Virus record (IMG/VR): IMGVR_UViG_3300047558_000137
Location: 186,001-250,000 of that record
DNA length: 64,000 bases
Reading direction: 5' to 3' (one strand)
Shown: positions 3,614-44,377 of the stretch, piece after piece
Numbering within the stretch: position 1 is the stretch's first letter
How the letters are laid out: every line of letters starts with the position of its first letter
The notes under the pieces: model-generated
Told to the model about the DNA's origin: nothing
What the model saw: the letters and a program-made list of their open reading frames with translations, nothing else
Databases searched by the model: none
Position numbers and translations under genes: made by a program

Positions 3614-3664
3614 CGAAAGTCCTTTATAATGGTAAAGTATTTACCAAATTTTGGACTAACTTTG

Positions 3665-3880
3665 TCAGTCAAACTTTGCTAACTGTGTGTAGTAGTCGGG
3701 GCGCTCTTTAAGATGATCTAGAGCGATTTCACGGGCGGTTGCTGTGTTTTTTGTATGCTCATGTTCCACGGAGATACCTTTAGCTAACTGTTGTTTAATA
3801 TATTCAACAGATACACTGTGTCGCTTGGCCAACTGCTCAGGGGACAGTGTGGGTTTATCAAGTATCTCGTGTGCTCTCAT
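3665..3880 (-). CDS. Small conserved phage protein (DUF5661-like)
   Basis: GISVEHEH..AREIALDHLKERPDYYTQL motif. Confidence 0.65.
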   Translation of the reverse strand: MRAHEILDKPTLSPEQLAKRHSVSVEYIKQQLAKGISVEHEHTKNTATAREIALDHLKERPDYYTQLAKFD

Positions 3881-5148
3881 TAGTGTTCTAGCAAGTATGT
3901 GCCAATAACGTCACGACTGTTGGCACTTGTGTCGGGGAATCCAGGACGAACAATAACGTTCCACTTTGGTGTTTCTGGATCGTGCTGTTCATCAGGCAAA
4001 TCTGTCCATTCGTCATAGTCAAGAATGCTTTCAACAGGAACATTGTAGGCTTGAGCTATGCGATTTTTTAGTTCTTCTAAAGCACCTTCTTTGTAACCCC
4101 AGATCTTATCCTTACCCTTAAGATCAAACGGATCTGGTATACGTTCTAATAGGCCTTTAAACATTTCACGTGGAACAATTTGGCTGTGTTTGACACGTTT
4201 ACCAGTCTGCTGTTGGTGAATCTTAATTACTTTACGCTGTTCGCCCTTAGCGCCTTCACTCCAGTTAGGATCAAAGTTTGGTGGCAAATCGGCAGTAATA
4301 GTGTTGGCCATTTTGCTGTAGCAATAGAACTTAACTTCAGGAAAACGTTTGGCAATACGTATGGCCATTTGCAAGTAGGCATCACTAAAGAAGTCGCCGG
4401 CATCATGCCACCGAACGTTAACTTGTATCTTCTGACGCTTGTAGGCTAGATACTGTCCTTGTATTTCGTGACTTAGTTGTTCCTCAAACCCCTGTGGATC
4501 ATTTAGCAAGAAGTTTAAGTTCTGACTCATTGTTTTCCATGGGCCATCAAACACAATGTAAAAGCCGCCTTTAACATAGCAGTTCTGTTGGCAAGAGCCT
4601 GCACCCGGGCAAGTGTTTACATAGACAAACTTATTTGTTTCTTCGTCTACTGCCAGCCCTTTTAATGCAGGCAATGAAGTGTTAAAGTAAACACCAGATT
4701 TTTGCATCTTGCTGTTCTGTGCTAGGATAGATTTAGGTCTAGTTTTAATAATAGCCTTCATTGCTTCAACATCAATGGTTTTACCATCGGCCATAAACTT
4801 AATGCTACTGGCATGAATGTAAGGCTTTGTGTAATAGTCAGTGGTCTTTTCTTTTTCACTACGTGTTTCTGGAGCATCTGGGCCCCATGTTTGTAATGTC
4901 TGTTGACTCTGTTGCTGAGTCTTGCTAGTCTTTTTCTCAGCATCTCTACGCAGTGCATCAGCTTTAATACGACCTAGATAGTCGGCCATTTCTTCATCAG
5001 GTACTTCAGTGTGTGGTGCGTCTAGACCGATTGCTTCATCTACTTCAGCGTCGGGCTGTTGACCTTTAAACAATGCACTCAGTGGCTTTACTTCTACGCC
5101 AGGTAGTTTGATGCTTTCGTATAATTTGTTAAATTCTTTGTATCTCAT
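3880..5148 (-). CDS. GP88-like Fe-S/radical-SAM-like protein
   Basis: TCPGAGSCQQNCY, VRWHDAGDFFS and FYCYSK motifs typical of the phage gene product 88 family. Confidence 0.7.
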   Translation of the reverse strand: MRYKEFNKLYESIKLPGVEVKPLSALFKGQQPDAEVDEAIGLDAPHTEVPDEEMADYLGRIKADALRRDAEKKTSKTQQQSQQTLQTWGPDAPETRSEKEKTTDYYTKPYIHASSIKFMADGKTIDVEAMKAIIKTRPKSILAQNSKMQKSGVYFNTSLPALKGLAVDEETNKFVYVNTCPGAGSCQQNCYVKGGFYIVFDGPWKTMSQNLNFLLNDPQGFEEQLSHEIQGQYLAYKRQKIQVNVRWHDAGDFFSDAYLQMAIRIAKRFPEVKFYCYSKMANTITADLPPNFDPNWSEGAKGEQRKVIKIHQQQTGKRVKHSQIVPREMFKGLLERIPDPFDLKGKDKIWGYKEGALEELKNRIAQAYNVPVESILDYDEWTDLPDEQHDPETPKWNVIVRPGFPDTSANSRDVIGTYLLEH

Positions 5149-5157
5149 ATTGTTCTC

Positions 5158-6405
5158 TTATAATCTGCTGGTAGCATCTTTAATTATGCCTGGTAATACT
5201 TTTTCAATTGCACCTGATACCAATGTAGAAAGATCTCCTTCTAATGTCATTCCGGCATGTTGGAATACATCGGGATCGATTTCATCCAGTTCTTCTACAT
5301 ACATCCAAAATTCTTCTTTACGCATCCAATCGCCAGTTAGGTTAAAGATAAGATCATACATGCCATCTATATTTCCCCAATCGTTTGGACTTGATTGATA
5401 TGCAATTTGTTTGGCTAGGTCCCAAGAATGTGTTAACGAAGTTTCTATCATTGCATATAGTTCTTCATAATCAATAATATCTCTTACCAGGGAATCTGAC
5501 CGTACAACATCTCTAGCAAGTTTCTTGGCTTCGGTGCTTGCAGTATTCTTTAGATATGTTGATAGCTGTTTAGTTAATTGAGATTTAACATCTTGTTCTA
5601 TTGTGTCAAACTGTTCGGGCGAATACAAGAACGCATAGGCACCAGTACGTTCGGCAGTGGCACGGAACAGATCTCTTAATTGTGGAAACCTATCAAGCAA
5701 TGAAGGAATGTCAGTCTGACGATCATTCTCGTCCATAAACTGTTTAGCTTCAAAATGGAATTGATATTTTTCGCCGGGATGTGAAGGCTTTGTTGGGATA
5801 ACAATGTACAATGGTCCGGACTTGGCGTATTGGTCAAACATATTGTTGTCTCGACCTGCTGTACACCAACGTGTGCCTTGCCCATAGTAGCATGATGCTT
5901 TTTCATCGTTGGGCTTAATAACACGCACATCAGCATCGCGGTAGACTTCTTCTGCTGATCCACGGTCTACATTTTTAGGTTCGTCAACAACATCAGGAAA
6001 CTGGTCAACTACCTGACTTAGGTCGGGTAATCCACGATAACGATTAATGTCGTTTTGCGGAACTGGAATCTTTTTCTTTTGTACTAATTTAAAGAATTTA
6101 GCAAGGTAAGGAGTATACTTGCTCATATCTTCAAATTTTACATCACCCTGTGCATAGGCACGTGCCAACCAGGCAACATACTGTTTGTTTGCTGTAGGAT
6201 CAAACTGTTCTAGTTTAACCAACAAATGATGAATAATGTTGGCTGTGCCTTCTTCGCTAGGATTGGCGGGCATGGGCAAAATACGATCTTGCCATGACTT
6301 AGGCTCACGTTGAAACTTTGCCAATAAAGCATTGCCCAGCTTTTGTGCTGTAATGTCTCTATTGTATTCTCTTAATACCTGCGGGCCAAATTGTTTAAAA
6401 CGCAT
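5158..6405 (-). CDS. Conserved jumbo-phage hypothetical protein (WCT motif)
   Basis: ASCYYGQGTRWCTA..F..Y..GPLY..KYQFHF..QFMDEND. Confidence 0.7.
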   Translation of the reverse strand: MRFKQFGPQVLREYNRDITAQKLGNALLAKFQREPKSWQDRILPMPANPSEEGTANIIHHLLVKLEQFDPTANKQYVAWLARAYAQGDVKFEDMSKYTPYLAKFFKLVQKKKIPVPQNDINRYRGLPDLSQVVDQFPDVVDEPKNVDRGSAEEVYRDADVRVIKPNDEKASCYYGQGTRWCTAGRDNNMFDQYAKSGPLYIVIPTKPSHPGEKYQFHFEAKQFMDENDRQTDIPSLLDRFPQLRDLFRATAERTGAYAFLYSPEQFDTIEQDVKSQLTKQLSTYLKNTASTEAKKLARDVVRSDSLVRDIIDYEELYAMIETSLTHSWDLAKQIAYQSSPNDWGNIDGMYDLIFNLTGDWMRKEEFWMYVEELDEIDPDVFQHAGMTLEGDLSTLVSGAIEKVLPGIIKDATSRL

Positions 6406-6418
6406 AAAATAACCAGTT

Positions 6419-7357
6419 TCAGTTATTTATGCGACTATTGTAAGGCATTAGTGCAAGGATTTGATCCAGTCCACGTGCCTGTGCAGCCATGGCACGATGA
6501 TTACCATCTAGTACCCAGCCATCTGCATCAACGACAATTGGCTTACGATTTACGTTATAGCTACTAACATCATCAATGTGGTCCCAGTTGATATCAATAA
6601 CTCGACGATATGGATCATCTTGGTGTACATACTCAGGAGTTTTTAATGAGCTCACTGGTACATATCCTAGTACCCAAACTTTACTGGCCAGAATAGGTTT
6701 TTCTAAATGATACTCGTGATGTATGCCCTGTACATATTTTAGTACCTGGCGGCTAGTAAACAATTTACCAACACCTTTAGGACTATCAATTTCTTCATCA
6801 ACTGGATCACGTTTACTTGGTCTAATCTGCCCATGCAGTGCATCACGTAGTTTCTGTAATGTTATTTTCCAATCAGTATCAACGTGTAATATGCCAATGC
6901 CGCCATGCGATTCCCATAAACGAATATTAGTTTCCCAATCATCAATTAAGATGTTGGGTGTTTCGTCTGGCTGCTGTGCATAGCGATATTTTTCGTGATC
7001 AAATATAACTGCCTGTGGCTGATCCTTGCGGATATACTTGTCTAGCCATTTGGCTTTTTCTTCGCTACTTTGATCCACATTGCTTAGTAAGGGACTGCTT
7101 AGTATGCTGTAGTTGCCGGCAATTTTAATAACGCCTTGTAGTAAATTACTGGCGTTAGGCATTGGGGGCAGTGTCTCGAAGAACTCAGGTTGCTTGGCAA
7201 TTTGATCGATGCCTATGTCTTGACGGTGTATTTCGCGCCAATACTCAACTCCATGTTTGCGGGCAATTTCCCCAAAGAAGTCAGCAAGAACCCCGTCCAT
7301 ATCTACGTAGACTAGGGGTTTTGAATGATATTGATTTTCTAGTTCAAAAAGTTTCAC
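6419..7357 (-). CDS. HAD 5'(3')-deoxyribonucleotidase fused to a ParB/Srx-like domain
   Basis: VYVDMDGVLADF and ILIDD (NT5C-type HAD); C-terminal PIVVDADGWVLDGNHRAMAA (ParB-like). Confidence 0.75.
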   Translation of the reverse strand: MKLFELENQYHSKPLVYVDMDGVLADFFGEIARKHGVEYWREIHRQDIGIDQIAKQPEFFETLPPMPNASNLLQGVIKIAGNYSILSSPLLSNVDQSSEEKAKWLDKYIRKDQPQAVIFDHEKYRYAQQPDETPNILIDDWETNIRLWESHGGIGILHVDTDWKITLQKLRDALHGQIRPSKRDPVDEEIDSPKGVGKLFTSRQVLKYVQGIHHEYHLEKPILASKVWVLGYVPVSSLKTPEYVHQDDPYRRVIDINWDHIDDVSSYNVNRKPIVVDADGWVLDGNHRAMAAQARGLDQILALMPYNSRINN

Positions 7358-7377
7358 AGTAATATATTTATTACTGT

Positions 7378-7935: not shown

Positions 7936-8045
7936 TGTGCAATAATCAAATAAACTACCATCAGCGCAATACCCCAGGCTGCAATTTTTGTGCCTAATTC
8001 ACTTGGTTCAGTAACAACAGAATTGTTGTTTTTTACATTGCTCAT
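7932..8045 (-). CDS. Small membrane peptide (37 aa)
   Basis: Manual translation MSNVKNNNSVVTEPSELGTKIAAWGIALMVVYLIIAQ, with ATGA overlaps on both sides. Confidence 0.55.
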   Translation of the reverse strand: MSNVKNNNSVVTEPSELGTKIAAWGIALMVVYLIIAQ

Positions 8046-8197
8046 AATGCCCAGTCCTTACGGCGGGTGTCATACTCCCTAATCCAATACTCAACTTCTG
8101 CTGTGCTAGTTGGGTATTTACTTGCTACATAATATTCAACGCTGTCTTGGTAAGTGCGTTCTGTAAATAGACTTTTGATCCATTCTAATAGTTTCAT
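8042..8197 (-). CDS. DUF3563-like small protein (51 aa)
   Basis: Manual translation MKLLEWIKSLFTERTYQDSVEYYVASKYPTSTAEVEYWIREYDTRRKDWAL. TAAATA and an AAGG RBS lie upstream. Confidence 0.55.
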   Translation of the reverse strand: MKLLEWIKSLFTERTYQDSVEYYVASKYPTSTAEVEYWIREYDTRRKDWAL

Positions 8198-8280
8198 AGT
8201 TTTCTACCTTTCGTAGTATTTACCACTAGTACTCAGTAGAAACCATGATATTCCTACCAAAATCTGTAACAGATGTTACA

Positions 8281-8901: not shown

Positions 8902-9002
8902 AATTCCTGTTAACAGTTGTTGAGTATCTATTATAACACTAGTTTGAATTTTTACAAAGACCTATGATCATGTAAAAATAAATAATACATAAAAGATCAT
9001 TT

Positions 9003-10538
9003 ATGAACATCTATTTCTATAGTCCAAGCTCGGGCTATGTGAGACCGGAACAAGATCCGGACCTTTATCTAAACACCGTACCATTATACCTTGATAGCTA
9101 CATTAAAAATGAAGCTCCGCATCTCTATGAGCATATAACCTGGTGCAAAATACAATTATTAAGAAAGACCCAACAAGAAATTGTTGAACAACTAAAAGAA
9201 TACAACGCCGACATGTTATGTCTGAGCAGTTATATCTGGAACCATGTGCAAGTTATGGCTATAGCAACAGGAATTAAGCAATTCCTGCCAAACCTTATTG
9301 TAGTAGTTGGTGGTCCAAGTATTGATGTTTACCGAAATAGAGAATTTTTAAATCAACATATAGATGTTGACTATGCGGTTTATTCCCAAGGCGAAGAAGC
9401 ATTTGTGGAAATATTGGAGCATGAAATAAATCAGAGACCAATTGATCGGTTACGTGCATCAAATTTAAGTTGGCGAACTTCAACTGGAATTAGAGTTGCT
9501 GATCACAGAGTTTATAAAAAAACCAGTGGTAGTTATTATATCGATTCTAAACATTTACTTGAGCAAATAGTAGCAGATACAGAATATACTGGATACGAAT
9601 TTGCATTGCCTTATGAGACTAGTCGAGGGTGTCCGTTTAAATGCAGTTTTTGCGATTGGACCTCGGGTATTACACATAAGGTAAGCAAACGTCGATTTAA
9701 TTATCGAGATGAGTTTGAATTGTTTGGTAATCTAAACATATTGAAATTTTTTATGGCCGATGCAAACATTGGGCAATGGGACGACGACGTTGGTGTTGCC
9801 CATGCTATGTCTGATTTAAAACGTGAACGCGGATTCCAATTTCAAATACAAGGATGGAATGCTAGTAAAACCCACAAGAAAAATGCATTTGAAATGATGG
9901 ATATATTAGTCGGTGCAGACATTCTATATGCGCCTAAAATATCAGTGCAGGATATAAATGACCAAATTCTATTAGAAAATGATCGTCCTGATATCCCGTG
10001 GACTGAACATCTTACATATATACAACAATTAAAAAATAAACATCCGCATAAACCAGTAATAATAGAAATTATGATTGGACTGGTAGGACAAACTCGAGCG
10101 AGTATGCGTACTATGTTTAGAGAAATCTCTTTACATAAGTTTGTGTTTTTCCCACACCTATGGATTATGCTTCCCAATTCTCCCGCAGGTTACGACTTAG
10201 AATTTCGAAATAAAAATGAAATTGAAACTAGAATAATTGAATGCAATTATTTTATGAGTGAGCCAGCGGAAGGTGTAGTTAGCACCAAAAGTTATTCTCA
10301 AGAAGACTATGCCTACTTTGTTTTATTAACAGCCATTTATAGAATAATACAAATGGAATTTAAGCCGAAATACATCAGCATGAGTATTGATCAAATTGAA
10401 TCAACTGTTGACCGTTTAGTTTCTTCTGTAGTATTCCAAAAGGTATTTAAACAAACAGTATCCAATCTTCAACATAGTGTCGATTTATTTGACGCGGATG
10501 TCATAAGACAAATGGTATCGTTTTACTTAGTTGAATAA
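9003..10538 (+). CDS. B12-binding-domain radical SAM enzyme
   Basis: LSSYIWN..VVGGPS..GEEAF (B12-binding domain); ETSRGCPFKCSFCDW CxxxCxxC. Confidence 0.88.
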   Translation: MNIYFYSPSSGYVRPEQDPDLYLNTVPLYLDSYIKNEAPHLYEHITWCKIQLLRKTQQEIVEQLKEYNADMLCLSSYIWNHVQVMAIATGIKQFLPNLIVVVGGPSIDVYRNREFLNQHIDVDYAVYSQGEEAFVEILEHEINQRPIDRLRASNLSWRTSTGIRVADHRVYKKTSGSYYIDSKHLLEQIVADTEYTGYEFALPYETSRGCPFKCSFCDWTSGITHKVSKRRFNYRDEFELFGNLNILKFFMADANIGQWDDDVGVAHAMSDLKRERGFQFQIQGWNASKTHKKNAFEMMDILVGADILYAPKISVQDINDQILLENDRPDIPWTEHLTYIQQLKNKHPHKPVIIEIMIGLVGQTRASMRTMFREISLHKFVFFPHLWIMLPNSPAGYDLEFRNKNEIETRIIECNYFMSEPAEGVVSTKSYSQEDYAYFVLLTAIYRIIQMEFKPKYISMSIDQIESTVDRLVSSVVFQKVFKQTVSNLQHSVDLFDADVIRQMVSFYLVE

Positions 10539-11378: not shown

Positions 11379-11398
11379 CTAGGCATTTTAGCAGTTAA

Positions 11399-11896
11399 TT
11401 AACATTTTGTAAAGTCTTGATACTTAAACCACCGGCGTTGCCCATGTGATATTTTTAGATTAAGTCCATAATCGGCAAAACGATCTCGCCAAGCATAAAA
11501 GCTAGGTCCATGTGCGCCGGACTGTTCATACATGGGTCGGCCATAAAGATCAAGGTGCTCCCAACGGTAGATGTCCCACTGATATTGGTGAACCATTTCG
11601 TGTGCTAGGGTATTCAGGAACCATTGGGAGCAGAACCATTTATCCATTAGACTAATAACGCAATAGGAACCCGAAGGCTGTTTGTTGTAGAACCAGCGAC
11701 AGTGGCCCCATGCTTTGCGTATGGACTTTACGTGTATGTCTGGGCGTTTTAGGGCATTGTCAAACACATGCCTGTTTAGAATGTTATATGCGTATATAAC
11801 TTCGTTTGGGTCGGGGCGAAATAACTTACGGCGTTGATAAGTTAGACTAGGAAGCTCTGCTTCCATGATTGCTCTTACTGGGTTTGGTCTAGCCAT
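11399..11896 (-). CDS. SprT-like zinc metalloprotease
   Basis: TLAHEMVHQYQ (HExxH) and AHGPSF. Confidence 0.8.
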   Translation of the reverse strand: MARPNPVRAIMEAELPSLTYQRRKLFRPDPNEVIYAYNILNRHVFDNALKRPDIHVKSIRKAWGHCRWFYNKQPSGSYCVISLMDKWFCSQWFLNTLAHEMVHQYQWDIYRWEHLDLYGRPMYEQSGAHGPSFYAWRDRFADYGLNLKISHGQRRWFKYQDFTKC

Positions 11897-11952
11897 AAAA
11901 AAGCCCTCGCTAAGGTATTTACATACCCCAGGAGAGCTCTTTATAGCTGTGT

Positions 11953-12672
11953 TTAACGAACTGTAGTTTGCCCGATAACTGCGCCTTCTTTTTGCAGTGC
12001 CGCATCACGTTTTTGCACGTATTCTTTGTTATCTACATTAAGCAAAGTAATACCGCCTGTAACTGCTGGCTTGTCTGGATCAGCATTAGACTGTGGCTTA
12101 CCATCAACCTTTTCGTCAAGTTCCTTAAAGGCTTTTTCTTTGCGTTCACCTTCTGTTAAGCGGTCTTTACGAGCATCAGCTTCTTTACGCATTGTGTTAG
12201 CATCGCCAATTGGTAGTGCAACCAACACGTATGTGCGTACACGATTACCTTCGGCCACGTGCTTCATCTCCACAGTTTCAACACCAGTGATATCTACGTC
12301 AGGGCAAATACTGCGAACTGCCATTTCCATAGTCATACCATCTTGTGTGCCAAACATTTTAGTTTGACTACGAACACGGCCGCCTGCGGCTACACAGATC
12401 TTAGTGTAGGCAATAGTCTTGGCCATCATGTCAGCCATTGCAAAGTCTGCGCTGACTGCTGTGCCGTTTTCGTAGACAGCGTTTGTGCTCTTAGGCAACT
12501 TGCTCATCCAGTCCGGGGCCTGGGTAACTGCCTGTGTTGCGGCCTGTGCCTGTGCGGCACGTTCTTGCGCGGCACGATTGCCATATGGGTCAGCTGACGC
12601 TGTAGTCTCAGGCTTAGTTGAGCTACATGCTGTGAGCAATGCAACTGCGGCGATTGTTAAAAGATGTTTCAT
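11953..12672 (-). CDS. Lipoprotein
   Basis: Lipobox LLTAC; APDWM motif. Confidence 0.75.
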   Translation of the reverse strand: MKHLLTIAAVALLTACSSTKPETTASADPYGNRAAQERAAQAQAATQAVTQAPDWMSKLPKSTNAVYENGTAVSADFAMADMMAKTIAYTKICVAAGGRVRSQTKMFGTQDGMTMEMAVRSICPDVDITGVETVEMKHVAEGNRVRTYVLVALPIGDANTMRKEADARKDRLTEGERKEKAFKELDEKVDGKPQSNADPDKPAVTGGITLLNVDNKEYVQKRDAALQKEGAVIGQTTVR

Positions 12673-23613: not shown

Positions 23614-24348
23614 TTAGTCGAATTGAATAGAAACTACGTGTTCGTAGTTTTTCTTTATTAGAGATTTGTACATTAGATTCTTGTGTACAAAGAAATTTGC
23701 CGCACCCGAATCCATACTAAACTTAGCCAACTGCTTAAAGTACATGGTCCTACGATTAAATGGACCATATGTTACTAGTTCGTTATCTGGGGTGTTAATT
23801 TCATGCACTGAGGTATGCCACAATGTACGATCCTTAATATCCCAATTATGGTTTTCTAAGAATAACTTACTAGACTCACCATTTTTAACTAGAGCAGGAT
23901 GACTAAATTCGCGATCTTTGAAATCTTGATTTTTATAATCGCGTAGTGTACTTATAACAAAATTTTTAGCCAGGCTACAAATCTTGTTTATTTTTGTCTG
24001 TTGATCTTGATCCGAGTCTGCAAATGTAAAATACTCGTCCATTGCAATTACGCATTGGAATTGTTTACGGTATTGACCTAAATCATCTTCGTTAATATAA
24101 GATACATTAACGCCGCGGCTTTTTACAAAAGATAATGCTGCGTCACTGATTTCGGTAACAGAAATTGATTTAGACTTGCAACTTAACAAGGCAGGATTAA
24201 ATCCCACGAACAATATGCTGGTAGGATCTAGGTTTTCTGTACTGTAGACGCCATCAAGTATATCTTGTTTACGGGCGACTACTTCATTTAACTTAGGATT
24301 AAATTGTAATGCAGATAAAACTGCATCGGTATATCTTGCGAAACTCAT
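23614..24348 (-). CDS. Hypothetical protein (possible Rossmann methyltransferase-like fold)
   Basis: SILFVGF..SVTEIS..FQCVIAMDEYF pattern. Confidence 0.5.
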   Translation of the reverse strand: MSFARYTDAVLSALQFNPKLNEVVARKQDILDGVYSTENLDPTSILFVGFNPALLSCKSKSISVTEISDAALSFVKSRGVNVSYINEDDLGQYRKQFQCVIAMDEYFTFADSDQDQQTKINKICSLAKNFVISTLRDYKNQDFKDREFSHPALVKNGESSKLFLENHNWDIKDRTLWHTSVHEINTPDNELVTYGPFNRRTMYFKQLAKFSMDSGAANFFVHKNLMYKSLIKKNYEHVVSIQFD

Positions 24349-24352
24349 GTAG

Positions 24353-25270
24353 TTATTTATCGGACCGAACCAAATCCAGAGTCACACAATGAAAGCCGCC
24401 TCCTAGGGTTCTACTGTGTCGCAATGTTGAAGGAATAACTGTGAATCCTCTTTTTTCCAAAGTACTGTGTAACGCCGTTTGTTGACTATCACATATAACT
24501 GTGTTGCTGTCCACTGAGAGCATGTTAAGGGCGATCCACTTGCTTGCATACGGGTACTGGTAAAAATTTTGAGGTTCAACAGTATCCACAAAAATCTTCT
24601 CCCAATCCCGGAATACAGCAGGACACGTTTCTTCAGTAACTCTGCTTCCATTTAATAATACCAACCCTTCTCTTAATGCTACAACGGTGCTGTCAATATG
24701 TACACCACTGTAAAAGTTGCACAGTTCGATTTCTACATCGGGAAACTGTTGGCACAACCAATCATAGGCTGCACGATTTCCGCTGGCAGATTCTAACATA
24801 AGCATACGATCGTTAAGACGTAGTACGTTAGCGGCATCCAACACCATGCCATGACTTCTGGGCATGTGTAGAATACGTCCTGCATCTTCTAGTATATCTA
24901 TATAACATTGATATTCCATATCCCTGCAAGGGTACATCATTGCAGGATCTACTACAGTATCACCGTAGACTAGTAAACGATCACGGGGACAATAGTTATA
25001 AAGCCCATCATGCACTTGAAAGTTCATCCAGTCAGGCCGCACAACCTCTACACCCAGCTTGACCAATGTCTGGCATAGCGTATGTAGATCTTCTTCTGTT
25101 TCGTCAATTATCCATTGAGGGACAGGACCCGAAGGGGCTGGAGTTTCTGTCCATAAACTGTTTGCGGCTTCTGCACGATAAACTGGATCATTTACAGGCC
25201 AGTTAGCATAGTCTGCACGACCCACTACTATCTTTTTGAGACTATCCCATTCATTATAACTTGATATCAT
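24353..25270 (-). CDS. Amidinotransferase (glycine/inosamine-phosphate amidinotransferase family)
   Basis: YNEWDSLKKIVVG, CPRD, DAAN, HIDS, GGGFHCVTLD. Confidence 0.9.
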   Translation of the reverse strand: MISSYNEWDSLKKIVVGRADYANWPVNDPVYRAEAANSLWTETPAPSGPVPQWIIDETEEDLHTLCQTLVKLGVEVVRPDWMNFQVHDGLYNYCPRDRLLVYGDTVVDPAMMYPCRDMEYQCYIDILEDAGRILHMPRSHGMVLDAANVLRLNDRMLMLESASGNRAAYDWLCQQFPDVEIELCNFYSGVHIDSTVVALREGLVLLNGSRVTEETCPAVFRDWEKIFVDTVEPQNFYQYPYASKWIALNMLSVDSNTVICDSQQTALHSTLEKRGFTVIPSTLRHSRTLGGGFHCVTLDLVRSDK

Positions 25271-29482: not shown

Positions 29483-30264
29483 TATCGTCCAGTCCAAACT
29501 TTTGGTTTAGCTTCTTCCTGGCGCTGTTGTTCTGTCTTGGGTATCCAGCCAGTGCCAAGGTGAGGATATTTCTCTATCCTATCTTCGACTATCAGAGCCA
29601 GTGCCAACCCAACTGTTGCCGCAACTAGTATTGATCCTATACCAATCCCAACCTCTACCATGTAGAGATTTAACATATCTCTTCTTCTTCGTTCTTTTGC
29701 TGCGTTTTCACGCATCTGTTTGGCAATTAACTGCTGTTGTTCTTTGCCCATAACTTCCATCATATCCGACACTTCGGTGTATAAGGCACCTAGTTCAGGC
29801 GGACTTTGATAAATCATTACTTCACGTAGTTCTTTACCCATTTCTTCTAATTGCTTACGCATTAGAATACGTTGTAGGGCACGTTTACCTAGGCTTGCAT
29901 CACCAGTGTATACTTCTGTTTTAGCACGGCGTTCTTCTTCGTCGAATATGGCAACACACTTGTAATAGTTGTCGTAATACTCGCCTAGCTTTTCGCCAAT
30001 TTCTTTATAGATATCAGTATGTTCGCCGCTGTTGGCTTTTTTGTTTAGCTCAACAATTTTGTTGCGCTCTTGAACATACTGATTGCGCTGTTCTACTGTA
30101 GCAGGTTTCTCGGGAGGATGTAGCTTTTTAAATTGGTCGTCGAGATCCTTGAGGACTTCTTTCACTTCCCCAGCAGCACCCTTTATGTCTTTATAAAGTT
30201 TGCACCCTTCTTTAACGAGCTTTACAGCGCCGTTAGCAAGGGCAAACAGCGTTAATGGATCCAT
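29482..30264 (-). CDS. Helical protein with a C-terminal transmembrane segment
   Basis: MDPLTLFALA N-terminus, coiled coil, C-terminal hydrophobic helix. Confidence 0.7.
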   Translation of the reverse strand: MDPLTLFALANGAVKLVKEGCKLYKDIKGAAGEVKEVLKDLDDQFKKLHPPEKPATVEQRNQYVQERNKIVELNKKANSGEHTDIYKEIGEKLGEYYDNYYKCVAIFDEEERRAKTEVYTGDASLGKRALQRILMRKQLEEMGKELREVMIYQSPPELGALYTEVSDMMEVMGKEQQQLIAKQMRENAAKERRRRDMLNLYMVEVGIGIGSILVAATVGLALALIVEDRIEKYPHLGTGWIPKTEQQRQEEAKPKVWTGR

Positions 30265-30355
30265 AGGTTTTCAGCCCATTCCTCTCTTATTATATTTAAG
30301 GAAATGGGCTGAAAAATTATCGCTGCGTTTAAGTTATACTAAATAAAACCCCAGA

Positions 30356-31123: not shown

Positions 31124-31124
31124 T

Positions 31125-33599: not shown

Positions 33600-34081
33600 T
33601 TCTTCTCAATGACTACTTTCGGTGTACGGGCCGGGTTCGCTTCCCATACCGCTTTTGCTTCCGCACCGATCTTGCCATCAATGGGACAGGGCGTGCCTGC
33701 GTCCATCATAGCATCCCATACGCGGCGGTCTTGACACATAGTAGCAACTGCTGCCACTTTCATGCCCATGTCAAATAAGGTTTTGCTTAGTTTTAGTCGT
33801 TCACAGTTATAGTCGGTTGTAGTACCGCCCATACTGATACCTAGAATTTGTGTTTGTACTGCACCAGATGCTGCAACTGCACATACGTCATTATTAATAA
33901 CTGTAACTGCTGGCGCAATGGCACTAGGTGGTGGACTATGTACAGTGGTCTTACTGTCGCTAAAAGTCGTAGTTGTACTGTTTGAAGTTGATTGAGTGAT
34001 AATTGGGTCTGTTTGTGCAACCGCTGACCCAACGGCAAAAGCCATAACAATGGCCAATAATCTAGTCTTCGCTCCCTGCAT
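33596..34081 (-). CDS. Secreted conserved T4-like phage protein
   Basis: SPPPSAIAP..DVC..GAVQTQILGIS.G..D.NCERLKL..GMKVAAV..CQD.RV..AM..AGTPCP. Confidence 0.75.
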   Translation of the reverse strand: MQGAKTRLLAIVMAFAVGSAVAQTDPIITQSTSNSTTTTFSDSKTTVHSPPPSAIAPAVTVINNDVCAVAASGAVQTQILGISMGGTTTDYNCERLKLSKTLFDMGMKVAAVATMCQDRRVWDAMMDAGTPCPIDGKIGAEAKAVWEANPARTPKVVIEKK

Positions 34082-34162
34082 TTTCTCATCTCCTGTTATG
34101 GTTTTCTTATTATACTAACTAAGAAAAATGCGTATTAGTATTTACAATGAGTTTGTTCTAGA

Positions 34163-34345
34163 TTAAATGCTGCTATCTGTTGGGAAGGTAAACCAATGAC
34201 AACGTTGTAATACCTGTATTACTCTATCACCGGTGGTGTTGAATTTCTTGGCTGCGTATTCAACAAAGTAACTCCAGTCACGTACATAATGTTCATTACC
34301 TTGTTGCCATGCTTGGTAAACGTGCTGTAGTTGAGATTCTGTCAT
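34163..34345 (-). CDS. Hypothetical protein
   Basis: ATGA-coupled to the upstream small ORF. Confidence 0.55.
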   Translation of the reverse strand: MTESQLQHVYQAWQQGNEHYVRDWSYFVEYAAKKFNTTGDRVIQVLQRCHWFTFPTDSSI

Positions 34346-34470
34346 TTCTTTGATTTAGGTTTAACTGCTTCTTTTTGTTCTTTAAGAAGTTTTTGCGTTA
34401 ACGGACTAGTATGATGAGGTGTTTGTTTAGCGGGTTCTTTAACTCTAGGTCTGCGCTTAAACCAACTCAT
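34342..34470 (-). CDS. Small basic peptide (42 aa)
   Basis: Manual translation MSWFKRRPRVKEPAKQTPHHTSPLTQKLLKEQKEAVKPKSKK, with an AAGGAGG RBS and a late promoter. Confidence 0.6.
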   Translation of the reverse strand: MSWFKRRPRVKEPAKQTPHHTSPLTQKLLKEQKEAVKPKSKK

Positions 34471-34512
34471 ACTGCGTCCTCCTTTTAATATTTAAGAAGG
34501 CCGCAACAATGA

Positions 34513-34821
34513 TTATGTATTGTTAAATCTTTTTAGAATTTCTTCATAAAATGTGTCTAGTTCTCCGCCAAACTGTCCTTTAAGGTGTTCTGCAATATCA
34601 TTGCATAGTTTGCTGTCATTTTCTTTCATTGCCTTAACGAACCCTTCGTGTAGAGTTTTATAAGTTTCTAAACTAGCAAATCCATTAATACCTATTTTTT
34701 CTGGTGGAACAACACAGTATGTTGTAACGTCTTTATCCTCAACTTTGAAGGTTTCTAATTCAAGTACAGTATGTGTGCTACGCATCTGTTCTGCTACTTC
34801 TTGATTCCAAATAATCTGCAT
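34513..34821 (-). CDS. Hypothetical protein
   Basis: ORF coupled to guaC. Confidence 0.7.
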   Translation of the reverse strand: MQIIWNQEVAEQMRSTHTVLELETFKVEDKDVTTYCVVPPEKIGINGFASLETYKTLHEGFVKAMKENDSKLCNDIAEHLKGQFGGELDTFYEEILKRFNNT

Positions 34822-35915
34822 TAGACACTTCCAAACACGTTATTAATTTGTTGCGTTACACGAACAAAAGTTGTTCGTTTGCTTAATTCTTTAAGACTAC
34901 GTGCGCCCACGTATGTGCAGGTACTGCGTAGGCCTCCGAGAATATCTAGCACAGTATTGTCTACAGGACCACGATATGGCACACGAACTGTTTTGCCTTC
35001 GCTACTGCGATGATGTGCAACACCACCGCTGTGCTTGTTCATAGCTGTGTCGCTGCTCATGCCGTAGAACTCAACAAACTTTTTATATTCAAAAGTATCT
35101 GCCCAATCTCTATTTAAATTTATTTTATGTTGACGACCAGTGTTTACTCGTTCTTCAATGATTGTTCCACCACCTTCATCATGTCCGGCTAGCATACCAC
35201 CAAGCATTACAAAGTCAGCGCCGGCACCAAAGGCTTTAGCAACATCTCCAGGACAGGTGCAGCCTCCATCGGCAATAATATGACCACCAAGGCCATGAGC
35301 AGCGTCAGCACATTCAATAATAGCACTAAGCTGAGGATATCCCACACCAGTTTGTCTTCTGGTAGTACAGACCGAACCTGGGCCAATCCCAACTTTAACA
35401 ATGTCAATACCATTTAGAATTAACTCCTCTGTGATTTCTGGTGTTACTACGTTACCTGCAATCAGTGTAACGTTTGATCCTACTTCTGTACGCAACCGTT
35501 CAATAAAACGTTGAAAGGCTGCTGTGTAACCGTTCGCCACATCAATGCAGACAAACTTAATAGCAGGATATGCTGTTAGAATATATTTTAATTGTTGTAG
35601 TTCTTCTGGATTAATACCAATGCTAGGAACAATATAATCTTTAAACCCAGGCTTGGCATCTATCCAATCATTCAATGACACCTGCTTGGTAACGGTAGTT
35701 AACATACCATGCTGGCTCAAGGCTTGATGCATAGCAAATGTACCAACTCCGTCCATGTTAGCAGCCATGATAGGAATACCAGTCCATGACTGTTGGCTGT
35801 TACGGAATGTGTAGGTTCTTTTTAGATCTACTTCTTTGCGACTGTTTAGTGTGCTACGCTTGGGTACAAATAATACGTCTTTAAAATCTAACTTGGTGTC
35901 TTGAATAATTCTCAT
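34821..35915 (-). CDS. guaC: GMP reductase
   Basis: [48 protein letters not shown]. Confidence 0.95.
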
Positions 35916-37503: not shown

Positions 37504-37566
37504 GTTACTTTACTTTGCTATACAGGGGAGGTGATTCTCCCCTGCGTTAATTATACACTATTACGA

Positions 37567-38080: not shown

Positions 38081-38097
38081 TTATAGATAAACCTAAC

Positions 38098-39186: not shown

Positions 39187-39187
39187 T

Positions 39188-39421: not shown

Positions 39422-39425
39422 AAGT

Positions 39426-39713
39426 TTATTTAGTAAAGTAATCAGCTGGTGATTTCAAAGGGCATTCTGCACCAAACCGAATTCCAGTTAGAATGGGCAC
39501 ATCTGAGTCTTCTGCCTGTAGTACAGTGTCAGCTCTTTCTACAACCTTTACCAACCAGTTGACATCTTCCATGCCCTTGTGGTAAAAGTAAACATTGTAG
39601 GGTCGTGCCAAATCCCTACAAGCTGTAGCGCACTGCTCAATTTGTTCTTGAGTTGCGTCAACAATTAGTACAGTCTCAATTAAATCCGGGGGAGTTATAA
39701 AGTTGCTATGCAT
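39426..39713 (-). CDS. Hypothetical protein
   Basis: FITPPD N-terminal motif; ORF in the operon. Confidence 0.65.
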
Positions 39714-41220
39714 TTTTATTCAGATATTGTTGAATTTGTTCACGCTCTACGTCTGTTAGTGTATCAGGATCGTAGCGTCCAGAATCAATTTCATCTATCA
39801 GATGTTTGATATACTGTTCTTCGTAAGCATAAACGTCTGTTTGATTTTTGTCAATCTCCATCCATTTTGTGCCGTTGTACTTAAACAATCGGTTTGGTAA
39901 GAAATCTGTGCGTAAGAATAAGTCACCTTTTTCTGGACCAGCAGGATACTCGTTACCAAAACTAGTATTGCTGGCTTTACCTAAATCTGGTCCGTTGTCG
40001 GCCTGTATTGCAAAATGGCTGTGCATTACCCCACGATTAGGTGCCGGTGCGGCCTCAGGTATTCTTGTTATTGCCACTGGCTCTTCTGGTGGCACTACAT
40101 AGTCCCCGGGGCGATCAACTACATCAACGCCCATTGCCAAGATCTTAGGTTCAGGTTCTCCTTCCGAAGTTTTGATCTCTTCGGCTTGCGTATGTTTGTT
40201 CACCTCGACAGGTGTGTCTTCCTCCTGAATCTTAGCTGGAGCAATAGCAATTGATGCAGTGTCTTCCATAATAGTATGTTCAGTCTTTTCAGGCTTAAAC
40301 ACCATTGGAACTAGATCTTTAAAATGCACAAATGGTTGCTTGAGATAGGCAAAACGATCTACTTCGGGCTCTGCTGCCTTGACTTCTTGCAACTCAATAT
40401 CTTTAAGTAGTTCTTCGGCTGCATCATTCATAAATTGATCAATGCTGGCACGTTCTTCTCGGTCTTCTCTGGCCCAGCGTATACTTTGCTGTGCCGCAAT
40501 AATTAATACTAGAGCAAGAGGGTCAAACACTGCAACAATGATAATGATTACCAGTCTAACGGCTTTTTCAAGAATTGATTGATCGGGATTGTCGCCATAT
40601 ACCAAAGCGGCAATATACTTAATCGGACCAACCTCGCTTTCGACTTTGCGGAACTCTGCGGCGATTGGTGCTCGTTCTTCATTGAGTTGAGATATCTTCT
40701 TTTGTTCACTCTCAATCTCGGATAATAGTCGTTTACGTTCAGCCTGTTGCCCACGTCGAATTGCAACCGCTTTGTCAGCACCCTTTTCATCAGTAGAACG
40801 CCCCATGACTTGGTCAACGGCTTCGTCCATTTGCTTGAGTGCTTTACGGTTGGCGTCGATATTATCCTTGGATACTTTGATTTTTTCGTCATAGATTGCC
40901 ACCTTTGCCATTGAATCACCTGATACTAGACTTTGATCACTGTGTGCTTTACTTAAGAAACCAAAGATACCCATACTAGTTAACAGCATTAGGAATGCCA
41001 CAGCAGGTACTAGATAGAATTTATATAGGAAACCGGCTCGATCCCAATTAAGTTTAAGCCAAACAGCGGCAGTGACTTTACCTACTTCAAGGCTGGCGCC
41101 CATAATAAGAATAGGAATAACCGCGGCAGAGAAGATAGCAGTAAGACCTACAATACTATAGTAGGCTGCTACGGCACTGATAACCAGCGCAACAAAAAGG
41201 GTAAAGTAACCAAATATCAT
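39706..41220 (-). CDS. Conserved multi-pass membrane coiled-coil protein
   Basis: AAYYSIVGL..LEVGK..TSMGIFGFLSKAH..EVGPIKYIA..VFDPLA. Confidence 0.8.
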   Translation of the reverse strand: MIFGYFTLFVALVISAVAAYYSIVGLTAIFSAAVIPILIMGASLEVGKVTAAVWLKLNWDRAGFLYKFYLVPAVAFLMLLTSMGIFGFLSKAHSDQSLVSGDSMAKVAIYDEKIKVSKDNIDANRKALKQMDEAVDQVMGRSTDEKGADKAVAIRRGQQAERKRLLSEIESEQKKISQLNEERAPIAAEFRKVESEVGPIKYIAALVYGDNPDQSILEKAVRLVIIIIVAVFDPLALVLIIAAQQSIRWAREDREERASIDQFMNDAAEELLKDIELQEVKAAEPEVDRFAYLKQPFVHFKDLVPMVFKPEKTEHTIMEDTASIAIAPAKIQEEDTPVEVNKHTQAEEIKTSEGEPEPKILAMGVDVVDRPGDYVVPPEEPVAITRIPEAAPAPNRGVMHSHFAIQADNGPDLGKASNTSFGNEYPAGPEKGDLFLRTDFLPNRLFKYNGTKWMEIDKNQTDVYAYEEQYIKHLIDEIDSGRYDPDTLTDVEREQIQQYLNKNA

Positions 41221-41287
41221 AGTCAGTATTTATTGAGTTTTAGACTGTTAGTCTACACTGACTTTTGTTTTGTGTCAAACGTTTTGG

Positions 41288-43495: not shown

Positions 43496-43498
43496 TTA

Positions 43499-43729
43499 TT
43501 AACTCCAAGGACGACCTTGGATCAACCCGCCAACGTTGGCATTATCTACTATAGTGTTGCCAGAATACTTAGTTGGTAATTTATTAATATCGTAAGTATA
43601 CCTATCATCTGCGCTAGTGGCCTGGTCTCTATTAGGAGCATCTGCCTGGCGTTTAGCGGCTGCAAGATTTAATTTAGCAACCTGTTTGGCCTGTTTAGTT
43701 GATAACTGTGCGATTCCATTTGCTGACAT
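43499..43729 (-). CDS. Small conserved phage protein
   Basis: ANGIAQL..LPTKYSGN..GL..GRPW. Confidence 0.7.
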   Translation of the reverse strand: MSANGIAQLSTKQAKQVAKLNLAAAKRQADAPNRDQATSADDRYTYDINKLPTKYSGNTIVDNANVGGLIQGRPWS

Positions 43730-44022
43730 TATCGTTTCTCCGCTTGAAATCCTGGGTACATACTAGGTGCGTTAGTTCTGATATCAGCAGGATTTTTTTC
43801 TTGGTGCATATCGTCGCCGCCAGGAAATGCAGCCGATAGTGGTGCTACAACTTCTGCTGGTTCGTTTGCATATTCTGGTTCGGGCACACCTGCTAGGGCA
43901 GATATAATTGCCACTTCGTCTGGTTTGGGCATGCCAATTGGCTCTACTGCTATTTCAACTTCTGGTTGCTCGGCTGCATCAACGATGTCTAGCACTTGTC
44001 TAATAATGTCAGTTACTCTCAT
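43729..44022 (-). CDS. Small acidic late protein (start MRVTDII)
   Basis: TAAATA lies 4 nt before the ATG at 44022. Confidence 0.7.
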   Translation of the reverse strand: MRVTDIIRQVLDIVDAAEQPEVEIAVEPIGMPKPDEVAIISALAGVPEPEYANEPAEVVAPLSAAFPGGDDMHQEKNPADIRTNAPSMYPGFQAEKR

Positions 44023-44036
44023 AGTGTATTTAGTGG

Positions 44037-44348
44037 TTAATGACCTGCTGCTCTTAGTCTTGCGGCTAGCTGGTCTAATGCGGCACCAATGGTAGTTACA
44101 CTGGTATTCCAATTGGCGCTGTTGCCCATAGTATAGCTCTGTGCATATACATTACTGGCTGCACCAACTACATCATTAACTGACAATATAATGTTTCCGG
44201 TACGACCGGCAACTGAATGCACAGGAGTAGAAGCATTGCCACTAGTAATATTGGCAAAGTTAAGATTAATTTTTTGAAATGCGTTACGTAATGGATCACC
44301 AGACCCATCATTTGCTGTTGCACCTACGTTAACGTTAGCAAAACTCAT
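44037..44348 (-). CDS. Short protein with a T4 gp9/gp10 baseplate-type N-terminal motif
   Basis: NVGATANDGSGDPLRNAFQKINLNF; VHSVAGRTGNI. Confidence 0.7.
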   Translation of the reverse strand: MSFANVNVGATANDGSGDPLRNAFQKINLNFANITSGNASTPVHSVAGRTGNIILSVNDVVGAASNVYAQSYTMGNSANWNTSVTTIGAALDQLAARLRAAGH

Positions 44349-44377
44349 ATAAATACCCTTTACGGTATTTATGGTAG

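What the first reader, a model, noticed from the sequence alone, without database searches (positions are those of the whole stretch)
3618..44372. Pervasive late-promoter-inside-a-hairpin translational locks
Seen: TAAATA sits in the loop or 5' arm of an inverted repeat whose 3' arm covers the RBS and/or start codon. Sites are 3618-3657 (nuclease), 6401-6433, 7356-7377, about 8198-8246, 8964-9000 (+, radical SAM), 11895-11944 (SprT), 30268-30315, 34473-34505, 41221-41263 and 44349-44372. The stems differ in sequence. Established: T4 uses this logic for a few genes (e, soc, 49, I-TevI), where read-through RNA folds and is silent while the late transcript lacks the 5' arm. Inference: here it is a general timing device, with about 10 cases in 64 kb.
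Basis: partly seen in the sequence, partly recalled or inferred. Interest (0 to 1): 0.66.

Follow-up and report, generated by a model that had tools for sequence, protein, structure and literature searches.

The report
Late promoters nested inside RNA hairpins
In this uncultured 374-kb freshwater jumbo phage, about one in six genes carrying the T4-like late-promoter word TAAATA has that word inside an RNA hairpin that would hide the ribosome site on read-through transcripts; this is the known phage T4 timing trick in a new lineage, and it is no more frequent here than in T4.

Summary
TAAATA is the most enriched hexamer upstream of ORFs in this 374-kb phage genome (95 genes against 7 expected) and in 178 related loci. 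It has no -35 partner, and the genome encodes a gp55-family late sigma factor.

Hairpins that straddle the predicted late start site and pair the SD or start codon are 3 to 14 times more frequent at TAAATA genes than in permuted, non-TAAATA or intergenic controls. They are more stable as sense RNA than as antisense RNA.

Two window sites (11921 and 7370) keep the hairpin across 10 to 30 relatives despite changed stem sequences.

- Four are strong: 11921, 30298, 34494, 8222.
- Three are moderate: 44371, 6429, 7370.
- One is weak: 3643.
- Two fail: 8979, 41232.

"Pervasive" is overstated. Only about 10-20% of TAAATA genes have such a hairpin. The same metric applied to T4 recovers e, 49, I-TevII and segB and gives an equal or higher share.

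No RNA data exist, so start sites and timing remain inferred. The 11921 hairpin also looks like an intrinsic terminator.

Verdict: a new member of a known kind. The side finding worth following is a large class of TAAATA-N4-7-ATG starts, which look like leaderless late mRNAs.

The parts
11891..11948 (-). Strongest hairpin. It fills the whole 56-nt spacer between gene 11953-12672 and the SprT-like gene 11399-11896. TAAATA (11916-11921) is at the apex. The 3' arm carries the GAGGG SD, a T-run and the ATG (11894-11896).
   Evidence: MFE -33.8, ddG -20.9, z -7.2. It is conserved in 30 relatives. The outer 8-bp stem is 90% paired, 7 of 8 pairs show compensatory change, and 0 of 500 shuffles reach that value.
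30261..30322 (-). Near-perfect hairpin of about 18 bp (TTTTCAGCCCATTTCC / GGAATGGGCTGAAAA). TAAATA (30293-30298) lies at the end of the 5' arm and in the loop. The SD GAGAGGA is in the 3' arm. The ATG is at 30262-30264 (gene 29482-30264).
   Evidence: ddG -19.5, TIR pairing 0.80, z -5.0. No T-run follows. The upstream regions of orthologues are not homologous.
34459..34521 (-). Hairpin whose core TGCGGCCTTCTT / AAGGAGGACGCA pairs the SD AAGGAGG. TAAATA (34489-34494) sits at the junction of the 5' arm and the loop. The start is at 34468-34470, opening a 42-aa basic ORF (34342-34470).
   Evidence: ddG -13.0, TIR pairing 0.87, z -3.6.
8184..8261 (-). Two-tier hairpin. The outer stem CATGGTTTCTAC / GGTAGAAAACTATG covers the SD and the ATG (8195-8197) of the 51-aa gene 8042-8197. 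TAAATA (8217-8222) is in the inner stem-loop.
   Evidence: ddG -9.8, TIR pairing 0.81, z -3.3. In relatives the hairpin sits in other positions relative to TAAATA.
44336..44394 (-). AT-rich hairpin with core ATAAATACC / GGTATTTAT (44349-44372). TAAATA (44366-44371) is in the 5' arm. The AAAGGG SD is in the loop and 3' arm. The ATG is at 44346-44348 (baseplate-like gene 44037-44348).
   Evidence: ddG -12.4, TIR pairing 0.69, z -1.4. It is present only in this phage and in an identical contig, L183. Other orthologues lack it.
6401..6433 (-). Hairpin GCATAAATAAC / GTTATTTTATGC. TAAATA (6424-6429) is in the 5' arm. The stop codon of the upstream gene is in the loop. The ATG (6403-6405) of gene 5158-6405 is in the 3' arm. 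There is no clear SD.
   Evidence: ddG -7.5, TIR pairing 0.70, z -2.3. No orthologue start was found in the loci held.
7356..7377 (-). Hairpin CAGTAATA / TATTACTG centred on TAAATA (7365-7370). Its 3' arm runs into the GTG start (7355-7357) of the deoxyribonucleotidase-like gene 6419-7357. The spacing is leaderless-type (7 nt, no SD).
   Evidence: ddG -8.1; z is -4.4 on the 42-nt core. Ten of 12 orthologues keep a hairpin centred on TAAATA (z -3 to -5.8) in two different designs.
3615..3660 (-). Weak two-tier hairpin before the nuclease gene 2789-3613. The inner stem is GGTAAAG / CTTTACC at TAAATA (3638-3643). The outer 5-bp stem AGTCC / GGACT touches the SD.
   Evidence: ddG -5.0, TIR pairing 0.30, z -1.7. 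Relative L161 keeps the outer stem (GGTCC/GGACT) with a different inner stem, AAACAGG[TAAATA]CCTGTTT.
8964..9005 (+). Claimed hairpin before the radical-SAM gene 9003-10538, with TAAATA at 8979-8984. It is not supported.
   Evidence: ddG -2.3, TIR pairing 0.14, z -0.5. The MFE structure does not pair the ribosome site with upstream sequence. It lies in a divergent intergenic region.
41221..41263 (-). Stem AGTCAGT / ACTGACT with an inner hairpin and TAAATA (41227-41232) in the large loop. It ends immediately before the ATG (41218-41220) of the virion-protein gene 39706-41220. The spacing is leaderless-type (6 nt). It does not fit the lock as defined.
   Evidence: ddG across the predicted start site is only -2.4 and TIR pairing 0.25. 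The whole region has z -2.7.
24334..24392 (-). TAAATA is at 24354-24359 with 5 nt to the ATG at 24346-24348. A long-range stem pairs codons 1-5 with upstream sequence.
   Evidence: ddG -7.7, TIR pairing 0.46, z -0.85. This is a marginal case.

Best explanation
TAAATA is the core of the late promoter read by host RNA polymerase carrying this phage's gp55-family sigma factor. It is the T4 word TATAAATA shortened to 6 bp. Transcription is inferred to start about 5-6 nt after the motif.

At a minority of these promoters the motif lies in the loop or 5' arm of an RNA hairpin. That minority is about 9-18 of 92 in the genome and 7 of the 10 listed sites. RNA reading through from upstream genes contains both arms and folds, so the Shine-Dalgarno sequence and/or start codon is paired and not translated. 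RNA started at the gene's own promoter begins inside the loop or 3' arm, lacks the 5' arm and is translated. This is the mechanism shown experimentally for T4 e, I-TevI and others.

Shown here:
- The motif's enrichment and its lack of a -35 element.
- The presence of the sigma gene.
- The excess, placement and strand asymmetry of the hairpins.
- Covariation at two sites.

Inferred:
- That TAAATA is a promoter and is late.
- The position of the start site.
- That read-through RNA exists.
- That translation is blocked.

At 11921 the same hairpin probably also terminates upstream transcription.
For: Promoter identity:
- TAAATA occurs upstream of 95 ORFs against 7.3 expected, the top hexamer alongside AAGGAG. 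In relatives it is 364 against 37.7.
- The -35 match distribution equals random, whereas TATAAT sites have a -35 element.
- A gp55-family sigma is encoded: phrog_12791 at 1.5e-79, phrog_234 at 8e-24, T4 gp55 at 3.5e-6.
- Motif-to-start distances cluster at 4-7 nt and at 15-29 nt, with few at 8-14.

Hairpins:
- Excess over permuted pairs, over non-TAAATA genes and over intergenic controls.
- The cut-position scan peaks at the predicted start site.
- The excess is replicated in relatives: 13.4% against 1.5%. After clustering by N-terminus it is 13.3% against 5.2%, p = 4e-5.
- Sense RNA is more stable than antisense in 72 of 99 cases under symmetric selection.
- Covariation at the SprT-like gene and at the deoxyribonucleotidase-like gene.

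Calibration and context:
- The same metric puts T4 e, 49, I-TevII and segB on top.
- The T4 mechanism is documented in PMC3014915 and PMC2988022.
- Several locked genes look structural, with tail-fibre or baseplate-like N-termini.
Against: - There are no transcript data at all, so start sites, timing class and read-through are all unverified.
- TAAATA also precedes nucleotide-metabolism and nuclease genes, which are not late genes in T4.
- Because the motif sits only 15-25 nt from the ATG, any hairpin with the motif in its loop will overlap the SD by geometry. TIR masking may therefore be incidental.
- By soft pairing probability alone, the difference from controls is small (0.40 against 0.32).
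- In relatives some TAAATA-in-loop hairpins leave the SD free: L003, L004, L027, L070, L164, L161, L229.
- Most sites are not conserved between relatives at 70-80% protein identity.
- The 11921 hairpin is GC-rich and followed by a mostly conserved T-run.
Confidence: 0.6

Rival explanations
1. The hairpins are mainly intrinsic terminators or 3'-end stabilisers of the upstream transcription unit. In a tightly packed genome the next gene's promoter is nested in their loop, so transcripts from that promoter escape termination. Pairing of the ribosome site is then a by-product of the short distance between motif and start codon.
For: - The 11921 hairpin starts 5 nt after the upstream stop codon, is GC-rich (-33.8 kcal/mol) and is followed by a T-run kept in most of 30 relatives.
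- The site at genome position 120393 is similar.
- Relatives show GGCCCTG[TAAATA..]CAGGGCTTT-type hairpins that leave the SD free.
- A second hairpin peak 20-40 nt upstream of TAAATA shows that terminator-then-promoter is a common layout.
Against: - By eye, 30298, 34494, 44371, 8222, 6429 and 7370 have no T-run after the stem. My automated T-run count (1 of 25 in the genome, 8 of 97 in relatives) scored the 11921 hairpin itself as having one T and cannot be relied on.
- Stems often extend over the start codon and into the ORF.
- At the leaderless-type gene 6419-7357, design B pairs the ATG and codons 2-3. A terminator has no need for that.
Confidence: 0.25
2. UAAAUA is an RNA processing signal rather than a promoter. 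An endonuclease cuts near it within a hairpin and creates the 5' ends of translatable mRNAs.
For: The bimodal spacing to the start codon would also fit defined 5' ends made by cleavage. T4 has a sequence-specific mRNA endonuclease, RegB (PMC3014915).
Against: - The motif matches the core of the T4 late promoter.
- A gp55-family sigma is present.
- Like T4 late promoters, the motif has no -35 element.
- Most TAAATA sites are not in hairpins.
Confidence: 0.05
3. The inverted repeats act on DNA, either as operators for a dimeric regulator or as cruciforms that help open a weak 6-bp promoter.
For: Several stems flank the motif tightly (L161, orthologues of 6419-7357), including at genes with no SD to mask.
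Against: - Stem sequences differ at every site, so a sequence-specific protein is unlikely.
- G·U pairs are tolerated while A·C pairs are not. Sense RNA is more stable than antisense in 72 of 99 cases. That asymmetry exists only in RNA.
- Stems of 4-9 bp with loops of 5-10 nt extrude poorly as cruciforms (general knowledge).
Confidence: 0.03
4. Chance. AT-rich motifs pair easily with AT-rich leaders such as TAAATA with TATTTA, and a reader looking for hairpins will find them.
For: The weakest listed sites (8979, 41232, 3643) and the unconserved AT-rich 44371 stem are individually compatible with chance.
Against: For the set as a whole, permuted, non-TAAATA and intergenic controls are all exceeded. 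Two sites covary.
Confidence: 0.04

Closest known systems
T4 late-promoter-in-hairpin translational control (genes e, soc, 49, I-TevI/II/III, segB; mobE of Aeh1)
   Same: - A gp55-type, -35-less, AT-rich promoter sits in the 5' half or loop of a hairpin whose 3' half holds the SD and AUG, so only the gene's own late transcript would be translatable.
- Energies are similar: T4 e, 49, I-TevII and segB score -11 to -15 on my metric, and the strong sites here score -12 to -21.
- The share of late promoters involved is similar.
   Different: - The promoter word is 6 bp (TAAATA, with a weak A preference before it) rather than TATAAATA. The full 8-mer occurs only 13 times in 374 kb.
- The lineage is an uncultured freshwater jumbo phage whose sigma is closest to PA5oct, Phosso and Atu_ph07 at 40-46% identity.
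- Some cases sit at leaderless-type starts where the AUG itself, not an SD, is paired.
- Nothing is experimentally mapped here.
Intrinsic (rho-independent) terminators
   Same: The 11921 hairpin, and a few others in the genome and its relatives, are GC-rich stems directly after a stop codon and followed by a T-run.
   Different: They carry a promoter word at the apex and the next gene's SD in the 3' arm. Most of the other hairpins have no T-run (by eye; the automated count is unreliable).
Leaderless mRNAs (for example lambda cI from P_RM)
   Same: About 30 genes here and about 94 in relatives have TAAATA followed by 4-7 nt and then ATG, with no SD. This places the AUG at or next to the predicted +1.
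   Different: Here it would be a whole class of gp55-type promoter transcripts. T4's first 100 kb shows no credible case. The 5' ends are unmapped.

Membership tests
T4-type late-promoter/hairpin translational control | The phage encodes a gp55-family late sigma factor. | tested here: met
   G000:C1 about 6101-6976(-), 291 aa: phrog_12791 E 1.5e-79 and phrog_234 E 8e-24. T4 gp55 matches at E 3.5e-6.
T4-type late-promoter/hairpin translational control | A late promoter that is a -10-type AT-rich box (T4: TATAAATA at -13 to -6) with no -35 element. | tested here: inconclusive
   The core TAAATA is enriched 13-fold upstream of ORFs and has no -35 signal. The full 8-mer is not enriched: 4 in the window against 5.1 expected, and 13 in the genome. 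Promoter activity itself was not tested.
T4-type late-promoter/hairpin translational control | The 5' arm of the hairpin lies upstream of the late start site, and the 3' arm contains the SD and/or start codon. | tested here: met
   Met at 7 of the 10 listed sites using the predicted start site, and enriched genome-wide. Not met at 8979 and 41232.
T4-type late-promoter/hairpin translational control | The late 5' ends map inside the hairpin. | not testable with these tools
   No RNA run holds this phage. The position is inferred from T4 geometry (PMC2988020) and from the spacing distribution.
T4-type late-promoter/hairpin translational control | Read-through early or middle transcripts exist and are translationally silent. 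| not testable with these tools
   Genes are co-directional, and sigma70-like TTGACA-N17-TATAAT promoters exist in the genome. There are no expression data.
T4-type late-promoter/hairpin translational control | The structure is under selection, that is, conserved with compensatory changes. | tested here: met
   Site 11921: 30 relatives, 7 of 8 pairs covary, 0 of 500 shuffles reach the observed value. Site 7370: 10 of 12 orthologues keep a hairpin. Not conserved at 30298 and 44371.
Intrinsic terminator | A GC-rich stem-loop immediately followed by a U-run. | tested here: inconclusive
   Met at 11921, where the T-run is kept in most relatives. By eye there is no T-run at 30298, 34494, 44371, 8222, 6429 or 7370. 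The simple scan did not flag any listed site. My automated T-run count missed the 11921 T-run and is not usable.
Leaderless mRNA | A 5'-terminal AUG on the primary transcript and no SD. | not testable with these tools
   Only the spacing is known: TAAATA-N4-7-ATG. 5' ends are unmapped.

The most novel reading that the evidence does not exclude
The family uses a compact cassette of about 50 nt as a class switch. One hairpin terminates and/or silences everything arriving from upstream, while a 6-bp gp55-type promoter in its apex launches a transcript that is either SD-led or leaderless. About a third of these late promoters would then make leaderless mRNAs, and the lock would be adapted to them by pairing the AUG itself (design B at the orthologues of gene 6419-7357). 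That would be a large, previously undescribed class of leaderless late transcripts in T4-superfamily phages.
Probability: 0.3. Interest if true: 0.6.

Novelty: new member of a known kind. Interest (0 to 1): 0.42.

Why it matters
The T4 device of nesting a late promoter in a ribosome-site hairpin appears to extend well beyond the T-even phages. It occurs in a very distant, abundant, uncultured freshwater jumbo-phage lineage that shares only the gp55-type sigma factor, and it occurs at a similar frequency. That points to an old, repeatedly reinvented solution and not a T4 oddity.

Practically, TAAATA plus its spacing gives a rule for predicting the promoter-linked (presumed late) regulon and transcript 5' ends in hundreds of metagenomic relatives. 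The covarying SprT-gene hairpin is a ready test object.

The leaderless-type class, if confirmed, would be the more surprising result.

Tried and rejected
- **Close relatives in the phage collection.** A near-identity search found none.
- **RNA evidence.** No RNA run holds the sequence.
- **Strain variants.** I laid contigs of four related metagenomes on window 29400-35000 (5,601 letters, within the operators' limit). Relatives diverge right at the start codon 30264, and no listed variant fell inside the 30298 or 34494 hairpins, so this gave no covariation information.
- **Orthologue comparison at 30298 and 44371.** Upstream regions are not homologous, and the hairpins are specific to this phage.
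- **Soft pairing probability of the ribosome site.** It discriminates poorly (0.40 against 0.32). The fraction at or above 0.5 is not significantly different from controls. Only stable hairpins are enriched.
- **Automated T-run count after the outermost GC pair.** It is unreliable, because stems extend through the T-run.
- **Simple terminator and promoter scan.** It flagged none of the sites, and sigma70-like hits were at shuffle level.
- **T4 gp45 clamp.** No match by sequence in the genome. This says little, because clamps diverge fast.
- **Rfam.** No known RNA family lies at any hairpin.
- **PA5oct literature.** It gives no TAAATA-type late motif.
- **First sense/antisense comparison.** It was biased by selecting on sense energy. 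I redid it with symmetric selection.
- **Gene calls.** My own gene calls are crude: a codon-score greedy pick with longest starts. Some starts will be wrong.

Full report
**What the window is**

The window is bases 186001-250000 of a single 374,314-bp contig with GC 0.41. It comes from a freshwater metagenome and is rated a complete virus record. No cultured phage is close at the DNA level.

Its proteins place it among gp55-bearing jumbo phages. A 291-aa ORF outside the window (contig about 6101-6976, minus strand) matches the PHROG families for the late-transcription sigma factor (E 1.5e-79 and 8e-24). It also matches T4 gp55 itself (E 3.5e-6). Its nearest cultured relatives are Pseudomonas phage PA5oct (46%), Sinorhizobium phage Phosso and Agrobacterium phage Atu_ph07.

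**Is TAAATA a signal?**

Counted over the whole window, TAAATA is not enriched (55 against 72 expected). The full T4 word TATAAATA is at chance level (4 against 5.1).

Position changes the picture. I made a crude gene call of my own, giving 553 ORFs.
- TAAATA is the single most enriched hexamer in the 60 nt upstream of ORF starts: 95 genes against 7.3 expected from coding-strand frequency. That is level with the Shine-Dalgarno word AAGGAG.
- The same holds in 178 loci from relatives: 364 against 37.7.
- The motif has no -35 partner, and its -35 match distribution equals random. The separate TATAAT class does carry TTGACA-like -35 boxes.
- The two bases before the motif are only weakly biased (A at -1), so the conserved word is 6-7 bp and not 8.

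The distance from the end of TAAATA to the start codon is bimodal. It is either 4-7 nt or 15-29 nt, with very few at 8-14. This holds in the genome and in relatives. The pattern is what a -10-type promoter with a start about 5-6 nt downstream predicts, because a leader must be either absent or long enough to hold an SD. T4's box occupies -13 to -6 (PMC2988020).

I therefore take TAAATA as the core of a gp55-type promoter with +1 about 5-6 nt after it. This is inference. No RNA run holds this phage.

**Are the hairpins there, and are they more than chance?**

For each of 92 genes with TAAATA within 45 nt upstream, I computed the free energy gained by joining the 45 nt before the predicted start site to the stretch from the start site to 12 nt past the start codon.
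- The mean is -4.9 kcal/mol against -2.98 +/- 0.25 when upstream and downstream halves are permuted among genes.
- Sixteen sites reach -9 against 2.5 expected, and nine reach -12 against 0.64.
- Genes without TAAATA, cut at matched distances, behave like the permutations.
- I then restricted controls to genes with a non-coding spacer of at least 30 nt and required at least half of the SD-to-AUG nucleotides to be paired with pre-start-site sequence. The excess remains: 18/92 against 6.6% at -7, and 8/92 against 0.6% at -12.
- Sliding the cut shows two peaks of hairpin centres. One lies 20-40 nt upstream of the motif and corresponds to ordinary terminators preceding the promoter. The other lies 10-15 nt after its first T, at the predicted start site.

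A softer measure, mean pairing probability alone, barely separates the classes (0.40 against 0.32). The effect lies in a subset of stable hairpins and not in all promoters.

**Calibration on T4**

I ran the same script on the first 100 kb of T4. It ranks the experimentally established cases at the top:
- e, from its two late promoters: -14.6 and -12.3.
- 49: -14.3.
- I-TevII: -14.0.
- segB: -11.4.
- soc scores only -5.4.

The mechanism for these genes is described in PMC3014915 and PMC2988022.

At T4-like strength (at or below -11) T4 has 5 of 18 ATAAATA-preceded starts. This genome has 9 of 92. The device is therefore not more pervasive here than in T4.

**Site by site**

| Site | Verdict | Notes |
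|---|---|---|
| 11921 | strong | SprT-like gene |
| 30298 | strong | |
| 34494 | strong | |
| 8222 | strong | |
| 44371 | moderate | AT-rich stem |
| 6429 | moderate | the ATG is paired; no clear SD |
| 7370 | moderate | the GTG start is confirmed by orthologues that have ATG there |
| 3643 | weak | tight inner stem plus a 5-bp outer stem on the SD |
| 8979 | not supported | + strand, z -0.5, divergent intergenic region with nothing to read through |
| 41232 | not supported | the stem ends before the ATG; 6-nt leaderless-type spacing |

An unlisted marginal case lies at 24359.

**RNA or DNA?**

I selected sites symmetrically, taking any where either strand's fold reached the threshold. The sense RNA is the more stable in 72 of 99 cases (p = 7e-6). 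In the SprT alignment U·G pairs are common and C·A pairs are rare. This asymmetry exists only at the RNA level. It argues against operators or cruciforms.

**Relatives**

IMG/VR and JGI metagenomes hold hundreds of relatives at 40-80% protein identity. Straddling hairpins are again enriched at their TAAATA genes: 13.4% against 1.5% at -12 with the ribosome site paired. After collapsing orthologues by N-terminus it is 13.3% against 5.2% at -9, p = 4e-5.

Two window sites are conserved structurally.
- **SprT-like gene (site 11921).** Thirty relatives keep TAAATA invariant at the apex. They keep an outer stem whose 3' arm is the GAGGG/GGAG SD. That stem is 90% paired, 7 of 8 pairs show changes on both sides, 0 of 500 shuffles reach the observed score, and slid controls pair at 35-66%.
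- **Deoxyribonucleotidase-like gene (site 7370).** Ten of 12 orthologues keep a hairpin centred on the motif (z -3 to -5.8) in two designs. In one design the stem flanks the motif and abuts the ATG. In the other (GACCT...TAAATA...ATGAGGTC) the ATG and codons 2-3 form the 3' arm.

Elsewhere turnover is fast.
- Orthologues of the 30298 and 44371 genes have unrelated upstream regions. Some of these carry other TAAATA-in-loop hairpins, some of which leave the SD free.
- At the 8222 gene the hairpin's position relative to the motif differs between relatives.
- Laying contigs of four related metagenomes on 29400-35000 gave no usable variants inside the hairpins.

**Interpretation**

The best reading is the T4 mechanism in a new lineage. 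Read-through RNA folds and hides the ribosome site. RNA started at the nested promoter lacks the 5' arm.

The main rival is that the hairpins are first of all terminators or 3'-end structures of the upstream unit, with the promoter nested for compactness. That fits 11921 well: it is GC-rich, starts directly after the stop codon, and has a mostly conserved T-run. It also fits some relatives' hairpins. It does not fit the sites without a T-run, nor the design that pairs the AUG of a leaderless-type gene.

A caveat applies to both readings. With only 15-25 nt between motif and ATG, any hairpin that has the motif in its loop will overlap the SD. Masking and nesting therefore cannot be separated by geometry alone. 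The two functions need not exclude each other.

A processing-site reading and a DNA-level reading are unlikely. Chance is excluded for the set, but not for the three weakest sites.

**Limits**

- Gene starts come from my own rough caller.
- The start-site position is assumed from T4 and from the spacing distribution.
- "Late" is inferred. TAAATA also precedes nuclease and nucleotide-metabolism genes.
- The loci from relatives were fetched around genes chosen because they have hairpins here. I mitigated this by clustering.
- No expression data exist.

Noticed in passing
window 926-931, 24354-24359, 39427-39432, 41227-41232, 7365-7370; genome-wide about 30 genes; relatives about 94 of 344: A large class of starts has TAAATA followed by 4-7 nt and then ATG, with no Shine-Dalgarno sequence. 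This puts the AUG at or next to the predicted +1, so these are candidate leaderless late mRNAs. More distant orthologues of the SprT-like gene use this layout in place of the SD-plus-hairpin layout. T4's first 100 kb has no credible example.
   Followed up: partly
window 144-523 (-): A permuted (two-piece) tmRNA gene: Rfam tmRNA_permuted 102 bits and alpha_tmRNA 57.5 bits. It overlaps the listed ORF 478-921. It may hint at the host group.
   Followed up: no
G000:C1 about 6101-6976 (-), L180:1396-2271 (-), outside the window: The gp55-family late sigma factor gene, 291 aa and so longer than T4's 185 aa. It is itself preceded by TAAATA 31 nt upstream of its GTG start.
   Followed up: partly
window 8198-8262 and orthologous 5' regions in L162, L164, L165, L167, L170-L172: The word GTAGAAAC(C/A) is conserved in the hairpin before the 51-aa gene 8042-8197. 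Meanwhile the hairpin's position relative to TAAATA shifts between relatives: loop around the motif in L164, and inside the late 5' UTR in L165, L167, L170 and L171. It is possibly a protein- or RNA-binding site.
   Followed up: no
window 41250-41278 (-): A sigma70-like promoter seen by eye, TTGACA-17 nt-TAGACT, overlaps the 5' arm of the 41232 hairpin. A transcript from it would already lack that arm (sequence).
   Followed up: no
whole genome: There are two promoter classes. TATAAT upstream of 52 ORF starts is often paired with a TTGACA-like -35 box (19 with at least 4 of 6 matches). The -35-less TAAATA class is spread over the whole genome on both strands.
   Followed up: partly
window 34342-34470 (-): The gene behind the 34494 hairpin is a 42-aa, very basic ORF (MSWFKRRPRVKEP...KPKSKK) that falls below usual gene-calling length.
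   Followed up: no
L183 (IMGVR_UViG_3300043451_000097): A 31-kb contig from another IMG sample is 100% identical in protein over gene 44378-45415 and carries the same 44371 hairpin. The same phage has therefore been sampled twice.
   Followed up: no
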